Position numbers and translations under genes: made by a program | The notes under the pieces: model-generated | Database searches by the model: none | The model's input: the letters and a program-made list of their open reading frames with translations, nothing else | Told to the model about the DNA's origin: nothing | Shown: positions 41,523 through 49,008 of the stretch, one piece after another | Numbering within the stretch: position 1 is the stretch's first letter | Layout of the letters: each line of letters starts with the position of its first letter | Assembly (NCBI RefSeq): GCF_002113885.1 | Contig: NW_018408902.1 | Span: forward strand, 1,416,820-1,480,819 | Reading direction: 5' to 3' | Origin: Mizuhopecten yessoensis | Taxonomy: Eukaryota | Length of the DNA stretch: 64,000 bases

Positions 41523-42407
41523 CTTTCAAAATATGAGATAATCCTGTGACAGAATTCTCTTTGGGGAATATTTGCTTTTTAACATTTTACACATATCAAA
41601 AGTCTGCTTTTTGACAATTGAAAGCACTGAAATATAATACTGCTACATCAGCAAAAACTTGCGTGTCACTTCAAGAATATCCATGCATCCTGTCTTGTTC
41701 TTATGTAATATAATCTTATGTAATGGCATCCTAAAAAGAAGTAAATAATATAATAATGAATTTCAGTGTTTTCATTTAATAATTTGTGTTTTCACTTCAA
41801 CAAAACATGTTTAGAATGATACATGTATATTTTAGGGCTTTAAACTGCTTCAATTGTCAAACAAAGTCACGTATGCGTATTTCCTTGCAAATATTTTTGT
41901 TCAGTTTTGCATTCATATTGGCTATTCATATATAACTAAGGATATACTTCATTTAGCTTTATTAAGATGTTGCATAAGGAAATACATCCTTTCGAAAAGC
42001 ATTTAGCCCATACAATAAAATTAACTCGTTAATTTATATAAATAATAAAAAGGATTGATCTGACCAGCAAAGGTACACATACAGTTTCAGCAATTTGAAG
42101 GACTGACAAAAATATAATTAATTCAGTTACGACATCACAAAAAACTTACGTGTAACTTCAAGAATATCCATGCAGATGTGATCATTTATCTCACATCTGA
42201 ATGGGTCCATCATATTACTGGCATCCTTAAAAGGAAAATACATATTATCAATTTCAGCATACGCAGCCTTTGTTTTCATAAAAAATACTAATTGAGTAAT
42301 TATAGAATACATAAGCCACAAAAATAAAATGAACAATTATCAGTTGACATGAGTACTGATTTTAACCATAATTGTTACAATTACTGTAAAGCTTCGAAAA
42401 ATTGTGT

Positions 42408-42486
42408 GATCTGAGCGTGACTTGAACCCCCAATGATGTAAAATAAATGCGAAGTCCACGATGCTAACCACTACACCAAGCAGCCG
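42408..42486 (-). other. tRNA-derived (SINE head or pseudo-tRNA) Pol III-like segment
   Basis: Minus strand reads ggctgcttggtgtagtggttagcatc (A box) ... ggttcaagtc (B box); no clean cloverleaf. Confidence 0.5.
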
Positions 42487-42747
42487 TTCCAGGAGATGAG
42501 AATGATTTGTTAACCAATATTATTTCAAAATCAACAGGGAAAGTTTGTGTACGTCGATGTTAATTTGTTGTGTTAATGAATGTAAATGTTAGTACTTCAT
42601 ATGTTGGGATACTTTCTCATCTGTTTTACGTTAGTATATGTTTTATCAACCACGATGTATCAAATATTGGTCGGCTAATCATTTTCAGACGGTTAATCAG
42701 GGATTTCCTTTACGCCGCTAAAATCTTTTTTTTGGACTTAGAACTAA

Positions 42748-43295
42748 TAGTCTGGTTCCCTGCTGCGAATGCTCCGACGAGTCTGCGCTATTCTTAGTCA
42801 GGTGAAAGCCACCGCCATGTTGTTGCGCAATACAAATCCAATATGGCATGCTTTCGGGGGATGGTAGGTTCGATTGAACTTTATGTATATTCGCCGGCGT
42901 GATCGGTATGTCTCATGTTGGTTTTTGCAATCAATCATTAACGTAATTTCACCTTATATGCATTTTAGTGGGTGTCCCATCTTAGTTATGGATTATGCAG
43001 GTGTTTTCTCTTTGTTCGAGCTGACAACAAGAAATACCCAAAATCGTAAAATTGAAAAAAATGCAACTTTCTAGCTTATTTTCTTGCCTTTCAATCGATT
43101 CTACGGGCAATTTCACCTTGGAAATGATACATTTCTCAAAGTGTCGCACTGTTTTTTCCTGAAAAAAATATCCCCGATTTTCACATCGGTCTACCACCAT
43201 GCATTTCACATTTGTGTGATCAAGCGACGTGTTCTCACTATATCACACAATTATTTGTATGTCTTCGTACTTATTATATTACCATATCATTTCAA
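42748..43295 (+). repeat. Left terminal inverted repeat (~548 bp)
   Basis: Reverse complement of 47735-48306 with scattered substitutions and three small indels. The near-identical spurious ORFs 42874+ and 47966- confirm the match. Confidence 0.95.
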
Positions 43296-43514
43296 AACTT
43301 TGAAAACGGTACTCATCAAGTAGGTACACCTCATAAAAACCATGTCAACCTACCTGCCCATAGGCATTGATAACATATTTTCCTTTATTTCATAGCTGAG
43401 TTGTATACCTGTAATGTCACTCTTAAGACGGCCTGCCTTGTGGTAATACAATACTTCTGGTGTAACTGTTACACTGTGATGTAGGAGTTATTTTTACTGT
43501 ATTGGGACCTGTGA

Positions 43515-45900
43515 TTGAACATGGCCAACATACAGCGGGTATGTGAACTGAAAAGAGCAGTATCTTCATTTAATCTTGTACAGTCACCACCAATCACTTC
43601 TCTGAGGCCAAGGCAAATTGATGCATTGTACAGTATCAAGGATACTAAAGATACATTTATTGTGTTACCCACAGGATATGGGAAAAGTTTAATCTTTGAA
43701 TTAATTCCTTTCTACACCAATTGTAAAGTTATTATACTAGAACCTCTGAATTCCATCATTACACAGCTCTGTGAAAAGCATGGGAGCAGTATTATCCACA
43801 TCACTGGACACCCTGAGAACATCCTCAGTAGTGGTTTTATAGAAAAACTTTAAGTTCAACCATGGGTCAAAGAAAATGTTGTCATCGCAGTTGATGAGTC
43901 CCATTGTATTTTGCAATGGCAAGATGATTTCAGGCCACCATATAAAAACATTAAGAATCTGAAAGCAATCTTTCCTAATTCCACCATGTGTGCTTTGACA
44001 GCAACAGTCAACTCAAGCTCTATTAAAAAAATCAGAAAAGAGTTGCAGATGATGAAAGGAGTACTGATTAATTCTACGCCTCTTTTGCGCAAAAACATTT
44101 CACTTGCAGTAAAACGACTCAGTCAGCACCATATGATTACATTTTTAAACAACTGTTTGAAGAGTACATGGAGTGCATTGAAAGTCGTAGTGATTTTACT
44201 GTGACCATTATATACACGAAGCTAATATGGTGTAGCAGGGCAATTGAACTTGCCAAAATGATGTTAGGGGAACAAATGACCATTGGAGAATTAACTTCCA
44301 GAAACAGTGTTGTTGTCCAATACCATTCGCCCCGAGATGCCCAGGAGAACCAGGATATATTAGAAACTGTAGGCAGCGATGACAATCATATGAGAATGAT
44401 ATTTGCCACTATAGCTTTGGATATGGGGGCCGACTTGAAGAAAGTGAACAGAGTAATCCATGCTGGATCACCTTCCACAACAGAAGTTACTGTAATGTTC
44501 AAAACAAGTGTCCTGTATATGTAGGTCCAAATATTTCAAAGGGCCATCACTCTGTCAAAAATTAAATATCCTTATGAAACTTAAATTGAAATATCCTAAT
44601 GAAATTTAACCTTGATCTGTAATTCCTCATTATTCAGCTATATGTCAATTTCTGAAAGCATCATGAAAATAGGAAAACGTTAGTAGGATAGACCACAGGG
44701 GCTTGGCACATTCCTATGACCCAGAATGAAAAAATAACCCCATGGTCAGACCCCGAGACCACTAAAAATAACCCCAAAGTCTGACCACCAGATCACTTAT
44801 TAGTGATCCGCGGGGTTATTTTTTCATTCTGGGTCATATGAACGTGTCAAGACCCTGTGGGACGGACGGACAGATGGGAAACCTATAACCCCAGCAGTTT
44901 GTATTTCTCGTACATACATGTACATAAATAGTACAAAACTAATTTACATTTTGTTTGAAAAAAATACTTGTATTGACATGGAAGGAGACATGTATAGATA
45001 CATGTAACAGGATAAGTAAATTGTGGAAAAGTAGTACAATATCTATCTTAACCGGTACCCAGGACTATCATGAGTGGATAACACAAATGTCCCTGGTTTT
45101 GTAAATCTAAATAGTAGTAATTCACATTTTGTTAAAAAAAACAACACTTGCATTGACATATGGAAAAGAAAATTACACAAGTGGATGTGAAAAATTTCAC
45201 AAATTATATTGATGGTTCCCATGATAAAACATGGAGAGTGGGATAGGTATTTTACTGGAATAGCCATTTTGGTATGAAAAGTAAATTGTAAGATTCTGAA
45301 AAAAAAGAACACATTTGTTTTGTTTAAAAATAATTTATGTGCTTTCATTATTTCAACAGATCATCTACTTTTCAGGTTGACAACATCAGGTAATTCTGTA
45401 CAGTTCATCTTTATATTAGTGTGCAATTCTTTCTTTGTAGAGTACATTCAAGAAATTGGAAGAGCAGGGAGGACTGGACAGGAAGCAGACTCGATAATAT
45501 ATATCAATGCTATGGATCTGTCATCACAAATAGTCACAGCAGAAATGAAGACATACCTAAAACTGACAGAAGGCTGTCGGCGTAATTTCCTCAATGCTTA
45601 CTTAAACTGTCCATTTGAAGCTGCTGAATATAAATGTTGTGATATTTGTAGCAAAGATACTGACACCGAAGTGAGAGGGCAAAATCAGGTTGTCCGTTTC
45701 TTGGTAAAACAAGCCCTTCAGCAGTATGTTGAAGCAGACATTTCTGGTGAAATTGCATTCCATCTGAATGACATGTTAATTGAAAGAATCACAGAGACAT
45801 ATGAAATTATTCCATTAGATACTTCCAGGATAGAACTATTACAAGTTACCCACGTTTGTTGCAGAATCCGTCAAAGTAATACTGAGTACCTTTCAATAGA
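43515..45900 (+). pseudogene. Transposon-borne RecQ-like SF2 helicase pseudogene (exon 1 ~43515-44486, exon 2 ~45441-45900)
   Basis: LRPRQ, LPTGYGKSL (motif I), VDESHCILQWQDDFRP (II and aromatic loop), ALTAT (III), FATIALDMG (V), YIQEIGRAGRTG (VI), CRR...CCDIC (RecQ Zn region). In-frame TAA at 43851 and a frameshift near 44120. Confidence 0.9.
44693..44860. mobile_element. Palindromic MITE nested in the helicase intron
   Basis: ccacaggggcttggcaca..tatgacccagaatgaaaaaataacccc / ggggttattttttcattctgggtcata..tgtcaagaccctgtgg; GA on both flanks (possible 2-bp TSD). Confidence 0.8.
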
Positions 45901-46222
45901 CACACAGACATATATATATATGTATGTATACACTGGACAAAATAAGTTAGGGACCAAAATAATTTAATGGTGTTTCAATAGGAATATACAGACCACAGAA
46001 AAGTATAATTATATCATAACAAAGGATGATGGTATGGACTTTATCTCTGTGACCCTAAAATGAGGAATAAAAGATACACATAGGTGAATGACACCTTTAT
46101 AAATTAAGTAGTGAGTGATGTCCAGGGTCATTATATATATAATGTTTAAAAAAGACTCATTGGTGATGCTAGAAACCTTAACTTATTTTGCTGAGTATTT
46201 ATACAATGTTTGTAAATTTGGC

Positions 46223-47734
46223 TCATTTTCCAAACTCAACATCAAGCCTGGATTTATGATAATCGATCCACGATTGTAATTGTAAATTGTCGATGTTATC
46301 CACTGGTGCTTGGATGTGTTTGTGAGTTATATGATGCCTCCTAGGATGAACCTCAAATGGCCTTATTCCTCGAAGATCATCTATTATTTTCCTCTCGTCA
46401 GATAAAGCATCTCTCTGTTTCTTAAAGTTTGCTCGTTTCTGTACACAACTGCCAGCATCATTATCATAGTTATTGGATATCTGTTCCAAGGCAGTAACTG
46501 CTTTAGACCGTGCCATTAGGTTCTTGTCTGTGTTCATTGGGCCAAGACCTTTAATGATTGTCTTTGTTTTGCGTACAATATGCTCCATTTGGAGATCAGC
46601 AGGTATGTGTGAATCCTTCTTACCCCTGGTATTGACAAACAATCCATAAAAACTCTCGTGACCTTTTTTAAGACTATAGCTAGCCTGCTGGTGACAGAGG
46701 AAACGAAGCATTTGTAGAGCATACTTGCTCCTACTGTTGTGACTTTTGAACATAACCATCATGTACTTCATACATGTTATCATTCTGTCTCTGTCCGGGT
46801 GATGAATACAGTCCAATAATTCCATGTAGAGAAGTCCCAGCAGCAGAGTCACCTTGCTGTATTGCTGCACATGATCTACAGCCACAGGCACCCTTATGGT
46901 CCTTTGTTGTCGGTTCAACACATGCAGTGTACTATGGACATTTTGTCCAATTTGAACTTGAACTGGCATTCTTGTTTCTTCCACCACAGTTTCCTCCGTC
47001 GTGTAATTATTGTTCTTAGCGAGAACATAGGTATCGATGAACAAATTCATTGTTTTCTGAAGCCATGCTGATGTAACTAGAACAGGTGGGATGTTTTTGT
47101 TTGGTTCTTTGTCAGGATTGTCAAGGCCAAAGAAATCGCACAATGCATCCACAATGTAGTCTCTTGTAAACGACACAAAGAAATCCTTGTCCACATCATA
47201 ATTATTTTTCACATCTTGATGTACATCATTTCGCCTGATCCGTACCTTTTCACCGTTGAGAGTACCAACTTCGAGACTGTTGGAGCTGAACAGTTTATTG
47301 AATACCAGCGTCAGGAAGTTCATGGCCATATGCCAGAGCTCAAATGTGATGGGGTTGAGATCACTGATTTTAGATCGTTCGTCGAAAGACCCAAACCGTA
47401 GCGCCTTTGCTCCACTGAATCGCTCTCTGGTCAATTGATCTCCTCCGATGTGTACCTTTCTATGTTCACTGGTGCCGTAAATCGAATCCACAACATCTAC
47501 ATTATGACAACAGAATTTTGCACACATCACTGTATTGTGCCTCATTGTACGAAATAATTTCTATTGGCACAACAAGGGATTTCTTAGCCATTTCCTTTGA
47601 ATATTCTCCTTCCAATTCCTCTTTCCATAAGCCATCAAACACCTTTAGAAATGGAATGTGATCTTTTGTATTTCTTAGTATATGTGTCACATAGTTTTGT
47701 TTGAGCCTCCTCTCGTCCACAGGCGAAGGTAAAA
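46223..47734 (-). pseudogene. Academ-type (DUF6589-like) transposase, 5'-truncated, one frameshift near 47505
   Basis: HIPFLKVF..YSKEMAKKSLVVP, then GGDQLTRERF, ELWHM, HNSRSKYA, FVNTRG..IPADLQMEH. About 425 codons remain open downstream of the frameshift. Confidence 0.8.
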
Positions 47735-48306
47735 TTGAAATGATATGGTAATATAATAAGTACGAAGACACACAAATAATTGTGTGTTATAGTGAGAACA
47801 CGTCGCTTGATCACACAAATGTTAAATGCATGGTGGTAGATCGGGTTGATGTGAAAATCGGGGATTTTTTTAGGAAAAACAGTGCAACACTTTGAGAAAT
47901 GTATCATTTCCAAGGTGAAATTGGCCGTAGAATCGATTGAAAGGCAAGTAAATAAGATGTCGCAGCTAGAAAGTTGCTATTTTGTCAATTTTATGATTTT
48001 GGGTATTTCTTGTTGTCAGCTCGATCAAAGAGAAAACAACTGCATAATCCATAACTAAGATGGGACACCCACTAAAATGCATATAAGGTGAAATTACGTT
48101 TATGATTGATTGCAAAAACCAACATGAGACATACCGATCACGCCGGCGAATATACATAAAGTTCAATCGAACCTACCATCCCCCGAAAGTATGCCTACTA
48201 GTATCCGCCATATTGGATTTGTATTGCGCAACAACATGACGGTGGCGTTCACCTGATTAAGAATAGCGCAGACTCGTCGGAGCATTCACAGCAGGGAACC
48301 AAACTA
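47735..48306 (-). repeat. Right terminal inverted repeat (~572 bp)
   Basis: Matches the left TIR in reverse complement; directly abuts the truncated transposase coding sequence. Confidence 0.95.
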
Positions 48307-49008
48307 TGGTTTTGGAAACATGGACGAGGAGCGTTAATCATTTTGGCACAAAAATCATAAAGTACACCTGGTTTTCCCAACTATTACGATAATTTAATTT
48401 GATAACTATTTCACTATTTATAAGTTTATATTGAGAACAGCAATGTTCTGATAAAATTATGACTATTTGTTTACTTAATGATAACTGGTAGCACGGACTT
48501 AGATAACAGGGATTGGCAACTCCAATTTCATTTCGCGTATGTATTGTCCACCTCTTGTATTTGTGCACCGAGCCGTGACGGCCTGTGACCCTCTCGCTGG
48601 AGCCAATTTACCTGTACTGCGCTTGCGTGCTATCTCACAGGCCGGTTTCCGGTATCGATAACCACGTTGTTTACCTAGGTGACAATAGATCGATAGTTTG
48701 ACACTGATTTGACAGATTAATAACACAGTGCAATCATCGTGGCTATAACTTTAGAAAACGAATGCGTACACGTGATGATGTCGCAAGCTTATCTGTTTAT
48801 GTCAAGCAGCATCAGGTAGGTATCTGATCGGATGATACATCATTGTCAAATATGACTGACTTTTTATCCCGTGATAGTTATTTAGATTTAGACTTTTTAA
48901 TGAAAGAATTTACTGATAATGAATGAAAAACTTAATATTTGGAGATGATAAAAGACGTCTCTGGCTATAGGCAGCTATATTTCGAGGGCATACACAGCAC
49001 GGTAGAAG

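What the first reader, a model, noticed from the sequence alone, without database searches (positions are those of the whole stretch)
42748..48306. Helicase-carrying DNA transposon: RecQ-like gene and GDQLT transposase between ~550-bp TIRs
Seen: long inverted repeats with TAG...CTA ends enclose a spliced RecQ-like helicase (motifs I-VI region plus Zn region) and a convergent ORF with GDQLT, LWH and DLQMEH motifs. Known (from recall): Academ transposons of the AcademH lineage encode a RecQ-like SF2 helicase plus a transposase and make 9-10-bp TSDs. Their mechanism and the role of the helicase are essentially uncharacterised. So the system type is described, but this family may not be, and annotation pipelines would probably mislabel the ORFs as host RecQ and a DUF protein. 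The copy is dead (TAA at 43851, frameshifts), yet the transposase core remains open for ~425 codons.
Basis: partly seen in the sequence, partly recalled or inferred. Interest (0 to 1): 0.72.

Follow-up and report, generated by a model that had tools for sequence, protein, structure and literature searches.

The report
Dead helicase-carrying DNA transposon copy
This 5.6-kb stretch is a real but dead and internally deleted copy of a two-gene jumping element (a DDE-type transposase labelled only "DUF6589" plus a RecQ-like helicase, AcademH type) in an invertebrate, probably scallop, genome: a known kind of element and an ordinary genomic fossil.

Summary
Inverted repeats of 548 and 572 bp with TAG...CTA ends (42748-43295, 47735-48306) enclose a two-exon RecQ-like helicase gene and a convergent 440-codon ORF that matches Pfam DUF6589 (E 2e-33).

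- **Family hallmarks:** the family makes 9-bp target duplications. The helicase-facing-DUF6589 layout recurs in five diverged loci of this genome and four metagenome contigs. DUF6589 occurs in animals and fungi. All of this fits AcademH.
- **Untested:** direct clustering with curated Academ sequences, because no Repbase copy and not the AcademH paper were available.
- **State of this copy:**
  - The transposase lacks its whole N-terminal part, including the first catalytic Asp.
  - The helicase has an in-frame TAA and a 1-nt frameshift.
  - The copy has no target duplication.
  - dN/dS against a sister copy is 0.83.

The scan had already found AcademH-type elements elsewhere in this genome. 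Verdict: new member of a known kind, modest interest.

The parts
42748..43295 (+). Left terminal inverted repeat (548 bp), terminus TAGTCTGGTTCCC...
   Evidence: Terminus conserved at about 30 genomic ends. Contiguous with the helicase 5' region in copies C1955 and C4099.
47735..48306 (-). Right terminal inverted repeat (572 bp). Its inner edge is probably truncated by the deletion that removed the transposase 5' region.
   Evidence: In C1955 the TIR homology runs about 36 bp further inward, to the equivalent of 43331.
43521..44491 (+). RecQ-like helicase exon 1 (motif I LPTGYGKS, motif II DESH, QWQDDFRPPY, motifs III-V). Disabled by an in-frame TAA at 43851-43853 and a 1-nt frameshift near 44126.
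44492..45442 (+). Helicase intron (GTAATG donor, polypyrimidine-AG acceptor, phase 0). An intervening sequence at the same place is seen in metagenome relatives L066 and L068.
44693..44860 (.). Nested unrelated palindromic MITE (about 168 bp) inside the intron
   Evidence: I5, D2. At least 40 dispersed genomic copies at 70-92% identity.
45443..45967 (+). Helicase exon 2: motif VI (QEIGRAGRTGQ), Zn-binding cysteines, C-terminal tail and stop
46223..47545 (-). Transposase main ORF (440 codons, DUF6589 positions 102-401). Holds the second Asp (GGDQLT), FELWH and the Glu (ADLQMEH).
   Evidence: dN/dS 0.83 against the C1955 copy.
47505..47771 (-). Upstream transposase piece in another frame (frameshift near 47508). 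It corresponds to residues about 108-183 of relative P0002. Everything further N-terminal is missing.
42944..43119 (+). Two copies of the subterminal 12-mer YAATTTCACCTT in the left TIR (42944-42955, 43108-43119), mirrored at 47912-47923 and 48085-48096, with a degenerate one at 47726-47737. Candidate transposase-binding sites (inference).
   Evidence: (D3, D4) and 82: 5 matches against 0.81 expected, all inside the TIRs.

Best explanation
This is a non-functional, internally deleted copy of an autonomous two-gene cut-and-paste DNA transposon of the AcademH type.

The ancestral element had TIRs of about 550-590 bp and two convergent genes. One encodes a transposase of about 850-1000 aa whose core (Pfam DUF6589) is an RNase H-like DDE domain interrupted by a large mostly helical insertion, as in P-element and hAT transposases. 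The other encodes a diverged RecQ-like SF2 helicase of about 500 aa.

Proposed mechanism:
- The transposase binds the TIRs, perhaps at the repeated YAATTTCACCTT sites.
- It cleaves at the TAG...CTA ends using the triad Asp (GDNxN), Asp (GGDQLT) and Glu (DLQMEH).
- It integrates with a 9-bp staggered target cut.
- The helicase is an obligatory accessory. It most likely unwinds or remodels DNA at the transposon ends, or acts at the gapped integration or donor site.

Shown here: the fold, the conserved motifs, the 9-bp TSD and the conserved gene linkage. Inferred: catalysis, the cut-and-paste mode and the helicase role.

The window copy cannot encode either activity. The transposase gene has lost everything upstream of about residue 393 of a full-length relative, which includes the first Asp and a conserved N-terminal region, and it has a frameshift. 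The helicase has a stop and a frameshift. The copy has no TSD and lies between two unrelated repeats. It is therefore a rearranged or deleted fossil decaying neutrally.
For: - TIRs and termini.
- Motifs: near-invariant GDNxN, GGDQLTRER and DLQMEH lie on strand 75-86, after strand 228-232 and on helix 514-535 of the model.
- Helicase: colinear RecQ family hits and RecQ-only PDB hits.
- Linkage: helicase convergent with DUF6589 in five diverged loci of this genome (22-44% aa identity) and four metagenome contigs.
- TSD: 9 bp at 8 or 9 of 9 bases in 6 of 12 terminus pairs, and in no other register. This matches AcademH at 9-10 bp (PMC10045372).
- Distribution: molluscs, hemichordates and a priapulid, and Basidiomycota, Mucoromycota and Cnidaria. 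PMC10799480 reports AcademH from the same fungal phyla.
- Decay: N-terminal loss, TAA and frameshift, dN/dS 0.83 at 4.3% divergence, no TSD and unrelated flanks.
Against: - No direct sequence comparison with curated Academ or AcademH entries was possible. The name rests on architecture, TSD length and taxonomic spread.
- Kolobok lineages can also carry a RecQ helicase (PMC9587614), and Mutator-like elements share long TIRs and 9-bp TSDs. No single feature is therefore unique.
Their equivalence to Hermes, P-element and integrase catalytic residues rests on alignment ranges combined with residue numbers recalled from memory.
- No complete element with TIRs was recovered from other organisms.
- No RNA data.
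Confidence: 0.8

Rival explanations
1. The DUF6589-plus-RecQ elements are a separate, not yet curated superfamily of DDE transposons. They resemble AcademH only through convergent recruitment of a helicase and a similar TSD length.
For: No held paper or annotation links DUF6589/PF20231 to Academ. All 51 aligned members match no other transposase profile. No DUF6589-XPG adjacency, which would be expected for the AcademX sister lineage, was found in this genome.
Against: Every known AcademH hallmark that could be tested is met: two genes, SF2/RecQ-like helicase, 9-bp TSD, and the animal-plus-fungal spread including Basidiomycota and Mucoromycota. Earlier notes of this scan independently read similar elements in this genome as AcademH, but those notes are unchecked.
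Confidence: 0.1
2. It is a Mutator-like element (long TIRs, 9-11-bp TSD) that captured a RecQ-like gene.
For: TIRs of about 550 bp and 9-bp TSDs are typical of MULEs (established knowledge). [quoted passage not shown]
Against: No MULE, Transposase_mut, DBD_Tnp_Mut or SWIM profile hit in any of 51 members even at E up to 1. The helicase linkage is conserved across families at only 22-25% transposase identity and in other organisms, which argues against a one-off capture.
Confidence: 0.05
3. It is a Kolobok element of a helicase-carrying lineage, like KolobokH or Kolobok-1_CCri, which has a RecQ helicase on the complementary strand.
For: Kolobok lineages with a RecQ helicase exist, one with the helicase on the opposite strand (PMC9587614).
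Against: The family makes 9-bp TSDs of varied sequence, not TTAA (the TTAA hallmark is from established knowledge). There is no THAP or other Kolobok-related profile. KolobokH is reported only from fungi and as a fusion protein.
Confidence: 0.03
4. It is not one element. A host RecQ paralogue and a DUF gene happen to lie between two independent insertions of an unrelated 550-bp repeat.
For: This copy has no TSD, and its two flanks belong to different repeat families.
Against: The TIR is contiguous with the helicase 5' region in the C1955 and C4099 copies, and with the transposase side in C5106. The C1955 copy carries both genes between the same TIRs with a perfect 9-bp TSD. Short derivatives with the same termini have 9-bp TSDs. 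The helicase-DUF6589 pairing recurs elsewhere.
Confidence: 0.01

Closest known systems
AcademH lineage of the Academ superfamily (Kojima 2020, Mob DNA 11:15; cited through PMC10045372 and PMC10799480)
   Same: TIR DNA transposon with a DDE-type transposase and a separate SF2/RecQ-like helicase. 9-10-bp TSDs. Low copy number. Found in animals and in Basidiomycota and Mucoromycota.
   Different: No difference was shown. Sequence-level membership is untested. This copy is a 5.6-kb deletion derivative without a TSD, and whether this particular family is already curated is unknown.
P-element and hAT (Hermes) transposases
   Different: Sequence identity is only 8-9%. No hAT dimerisation, THAP or P-element profiles. 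9-bp TSD. An obligatory second gene for a helicase.
Kolobok lineages with a RecQ helicase (KolobokH, Kolobok-1_CCri; PMC9587614)
   Same: A DDE transposon associated with a RecQ-type helicase, in one case on the complementary strand.
   Different: Kolobok makes TTAA duplications, and KolobokH is a fungal fusion protein. Here the TSD is 9 bp, the genes are separate and convergent, and the transposase profile is different.
Mutator-like elements (MuDR superfamily)
   Same: Long TIRs of several hundred bp and 9-11-bp TSDs.
   Different: No MULE or SWIM domains and no sequence similarity. MULEs do not carry a conserved RecQ-like partner gene.
Cellular RecQ helicases (RECQ1, WRN, BLM, RECQ5, bacterial RecQ)
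   Same: Motifs I, II (DESH), the QW..DFRP.Y box, motif VI and the Zn-binding cysteines. The only PDB hits.
   Different: Low similarity (piece E-values 1e-10 to 3e-3). No RQC-WH or HRDC profile detected. Encoded inside a transposon and co-inherited with DUF6589.

Membership tests
AcademH (Academ superfamily) | Transposase clusters with curated Academ transposases | not testable with these tools
   No Repbase or Dfam. Kojima 2020 not held. No paper links DUF6589 to Academ.
AcademH (Academ superfamily) | DDD/E (RNase H-like) transposase | tested here: met
AcademH (Academ superfamily) | Separate helicase gene (SF2, RecQ-like) within the element | tested here: met
   Linkage conserved in 5 diverged genomic loci and 4 metagenome contigs.
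AcademH (Academ superfamily) | Target-site duplication of 9-10 bp (PMC10045372) | tested here: met
   9 bp at 8 or 9 of 9 bases in 6 of 12 terminus pairs of the family, and in no other register. Not met by the window copy itself (3 of 9).
AcademH (Academ superfamily) | Distribution in animals and fungi | tested here: met
   Molluscs, hemichordates and a priapulid. Basidiomycota, Mucoromycota and Cnidaria. Compare PMC10799480.
Kolobok | TTAA target-site duplication | tested here: not met
   TSDs are 9 bp of varied sequence, for example TCGATTGTA, GCGGTGTCC and AACCAAACT. The TTAA hallmark is from established knowledge.
MuDR / Mutator-like | MULE-type transposase domain (PF10551, PF00872, SWIM) | tested here: not met
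   None of 51 members matches at E up to 1.
MuDR / Mutator-like | Long TIRs and 9-11-bp TSD | tested here: met
   These features are shared with Mutator-like elements and are not diagnostic.
hAT | hAT C-terminal dimerisation domain and 8-bp TSD | tested here: not met
   No PF05699 hit. The TSD is 9 bp. Only the fold is similar.
RecQ helicase family (the helicase gene) | SF2 motifs I-VI with the RecQ-specific aromatic box and Zn-binding subdomain | tested here: met
   Colinear TIGR00614 hits at 10-67, 141-211, 240-308 and 309-433. Motifs read. Cys alignment to RECQ1. The gene is broken by a TAA and a frameshift.
RecQ helicase family (the helicase gene) | RQC winged-helix and HRDC domains | tested here: inconclusive
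   No Pfam hit to RQC or HRDC in the C-terminal piece. Only pieces were searched, and divergence is high.

The most novel reading that the evidence does not exclude
DUF6589-plus-RecQ elements might be a DDE transposon superfamily of their own. It would be structurally allied to P, hAT and MuDR, carry an ExxH signature, and be distinct from curated Academ. In that case a widespread metazoan and fungal 'domain of unknown function' would mark an unrecognised helicase-dependent transposition system.
Probability: 0.1. Interest if true: 0.6.

Novelty: new member of a known kind. Interest (0 to 1): 0.33.

Why it matters
For this locus, little: it is a truncated, neutrally decaying fossil of a described kind of element, and the scan has already met AcademH-type elements elsewhere in this genome.

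Two by-products have some annotation value:
- **DUF6589 is a DDE transposase core.** Pfam DUF6589 labels hundreds of "uncharacterized" animal and fungal proteins, and one preprint speculates it could be a fungal virulence factor. Here it is shown structurally to be the core of a DDE transposase with a P/hAT-like architecture. The Pfam model starts after the strand that carries the first catalytic Asp.
- **The helicase pairing is conserved.** The tight convergent pairing with a RecQ-like helicase persists across very deep divergence. This supports the idea that the helicase is a required transposition factor, whose role remains experimentally open.

Tried and rejected
- As a result, empty-site paralogues of the left-flank repeat and the long open DUF6589 frames elsewhere could not be read.
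- **Papers.** The AcademH paper is not held. Supplements of PMC10799480 mention neither PF20231 nor Academ.
- **XPG adjacency.** I looked for a DUF6589-XPG adjacency in this genome to tie DUF6589 to AcademX and found none. This is uninformative.
- **TIR searches.** TIR searches in the diverged genomic loci and the metagenome contigs found no convincing element ends.
- **Other blanks.** A profile search of the PDB by sequence found nothing. The sigma-70 promoter scan is irrelevant for a eukaryote and was at chance level.
- **Searches not run.** The costly search of protein representatives was not run, because its nameless top 150 would have been the same close DUF6589 proteins.
- **Rejected reading: domestication of the open ORF.** dN/dS is 0.83 and the catalytic N-terminus is missing.
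- **Rejected reading: host RecQ gene.** The helicase lies inside the TIRs and is co-inherited with DUF6589.
Full report
**Observation**

Positions 42748-43295 and 47735-48306 are inverted repeats. They are 92-97% identical in ungapped blocks and 91% identical overall, with indels of 4-14 bp. Both begin TAGTYTGGTTCCC, so the element ends are TAG...CTA.

The window lies in an assembly of 988 Mb and 82,659 contigs. The same terminus occurs at about 30 other places in that assembly and always stops at the same T. Repeats of this length and identity cannot be due to chance.

**Genes**

*Transposase.* On the minus strand, 46223-47545 is open for 440 codons. It contains GGDQLT, FELWH and ADLQMEH and matches Pfam DUF6589 at E 2.2e-33, profile positions 102-401 of 410. 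An upstream piece, 47505-47771 in another frame, continues the match weakly.

*Helicase.* On the plus strand, four pieces match the RecQ family model TIGR00614 colinearly at positions 10-67, 141-211, 240-308 and 309-433. They also match Pfam DEAD and Helicase_C, and weakly RecQ_Zn_bind. In the PDB they hit only RECQ1, WRN, BLM, RECQ5 and bacterial RecQ, including the zinc-binding cysteines.

Reading the frames gives:
- motif I LPTGYGKS, motif II DESH, the RecQ box QWQDDFRPPY and motif VI QEIGRAGRTGQ;
- a 1-nt frameshift near 44126;
- a canonical phase-0 GT...AG intron at 44492-45442.

I searched all pieces separately by reference. I did not build the joined spliced or frame-corrected proteins, and I made no consensus.

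**Nested insertion**

The 168-bp palindrome at 44693-44860 inside the intron belongs to a separate dispersed MITE family with at least 40 copies.

**What the DUF6589 protein is**

Relatives are proteins of 550-1035 aa, named only "uncharacterized" or "DUF6589 domain-containing". They come from bivalves, gastropods, hemichordates and a priapulid, and the best identity is 47%.

An alignment of 51 sequences shows three near-invariant motifs: GDNxN, GGDQLTRER and ADLQMEH.

An AlphaFold2 model of the full-length natural relative P0005 is confident, with pLDDT 86.8 and pTM 0.85. It places the motifs on a first long beta-strand (75-86), at the end of strand 228-232, and on helix 514-535. A large inserted domain lies between the last two.

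Foldseek's top three hits are also Hermes, though weak.

The alignment ranges, combined with catalytic residue numbers I recall (HIV integrase D64/E152, Hermes D180/E572, P element D230/E531), map close to D80 and E519 of the model.

DUF6589 is therefore the core of a DDE transposase. The Pfam model begins at residue 126 of P0005, after the first catalytic strand. None of the 51 members matches MULE, hAT, P or Kolobok profiles.

**One element, not a coincidence**

- In copy C1955 the same TIRs enclose the same transposase and helicase sequences, with a perfect 9-bp TSD (AACCAAACT).
- In C4099 the left TIR runs without a break into the helicase 5' region.
- Five other loci of this genome keep helicase exons H1-H4 convergent with a DUF6589 gene. 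Their proteins are only 22-44% identical to those of the window.
- Four metagenome contigs from other samples keep the same layout.

**Target-site duplication**

Across 12 terminus pairs, six have a duplication of exactly 9 bp, matching at 8 or 9 of 9 bases, and no other register scores. This equals the 9-10 bp reported for AcademH and differs from the 3-4 bp of AcademX (PMC10045372). It also differs from Kolobok's TTAA (established knowledge). Kolobok had to be considered because some of its lineages carry RecQ helicases (PMC9587614).

**Distribution**

DUF6589 clusters occur in Basidiomycota, Mucoromycota and Cnidaria, as well as in the animals listed above. PMC10799480 reports AcademH from Basidiomycota, Ascomycota and Mucoromycota.

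**State of this copy**

- *N-terminal loss.* Full-length relatives align to the window only from about residue 108 of P0002, or about residue 393 of P0116. The GDNxN Asp and a conserved region of about 200 aa upstream of it are absent. Copy C1955 still encodes that upstream region (L058 4124-4621, E 2.5e-23) but also lacks the GDN stretch. No same-family copy in the assembly has the N-terminus.
- *Deletion breakpoint.* The breakpoint coincides with the inner edge of the right TIR. In C1955 the TIR homology extends about 36 bp further inward.
- *No TSD.* The copy matches at only 3 of 9 bases. Its left flank is a low-copy repeat, its right flank belongs to a different repeat family, and no paralogue joins the two. 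An internal deletion together with a flank rearrangement, or a deletion or recombination between two neighbouring copies, would explain this. I cannot tell which.
- *Neutral decay.* Against C1955, the ORF is 4.3% diverged with dN/dS 0.83. The long open frame is therefore chance survival, not selection.

**Mechanism**

*Shown:* a DDE fold of the P/hAT type, a conserved D, D, E triad in the family, 9-bp staggered integration, sharply defined TAG ends, a 12-mer repeated twice per TIR arm, and an evolutionarily fixed partnership with a RecQ-like helicase.

*Inferred:* cut-and-paste transposition in which the helicase acts as a cofactor at the ends or at the gapped products.

**Comparison and novelty**

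All testable AcademH features are met. Sequence-level membership is untested. Earlier notes of this scan report AcademH-type elements and miniature derivatives elsewhere in the same genome, which they call the Yesso scallop. I treat those notes as leads. They agree with the multiple DUF6589-helicase families I found.

The finding is a new member of a known kind. The modest added value is the structural assignment of DUF6589.

Noticed in passing
window 44693-44860: A palindromic MITE of about 168 bp (49-bp inverted arms, two 34-bp tandem units) is nested in the helicase intron. It belongs to a dispersed family with at least 40 genomic copies at 70-92% identity, unrelated to the host element.
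   Followed up: yes
window 42348-42747 and 48307-48707: The element's flanks are themselves repeats. The left flank has 5 other copies at 73-87% identity. The first ~178 bp of the right flank belong to another family with at least 40 copies. From about 48482 a 220-bp high-copy repeat begins, with at least 40 copies at 86-94% identity, possibly a SINE.
   Followed up: partly
G000 C3490:229846-231123, C5574:885878-886354, C736:903247-903855: DUF6589 matches lie inside very long uninterrupted frames (942, 856 and 1075 aa). These could be intact transposases of other families or domesticated genes.
   Followed up: no
L023 (G000 C461:1706-1797): In a 92-bp MITE-like pair of the family's termini, the 15 bp on either side are exact reverse complements of each other, so the palindrome extends beyond the TAG ends. 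This may be a foldback or inverted duplication rather than a simple insertion.
   Followed up: no
G000 C1955:139767-154558 (L058, L059): This sister copy has a perfect 9-bp TSD but is heavily remodelled. It has 5.7 kb between one TIR and the transposase, part of which holds an N-terminal transposase exon. The 3' half of the helicase is deleted, and a 4-kb insertion splits the other TIR after its first 131 bp.
   Followed up: partly
Pfam PF20231 on P0005 (residues 126-571): The DUF6589 model starts after the beta-strand that carries the first conserved Asp (GDNxN, residue 80). The Pfam domain therefore cuts through the RNase H-like catalytic fold. Long family members (843-1035 aa) also share an unannotated conserved region of about 200 aa upstream, and one has a weak Myb-like hit.
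   Followed up: partly
window 41645-41687 and 42132-42174: A 43-bp direct repeat (91% identical) spaced 487 bp apart lies just upstream of the element.
   Followed up: no
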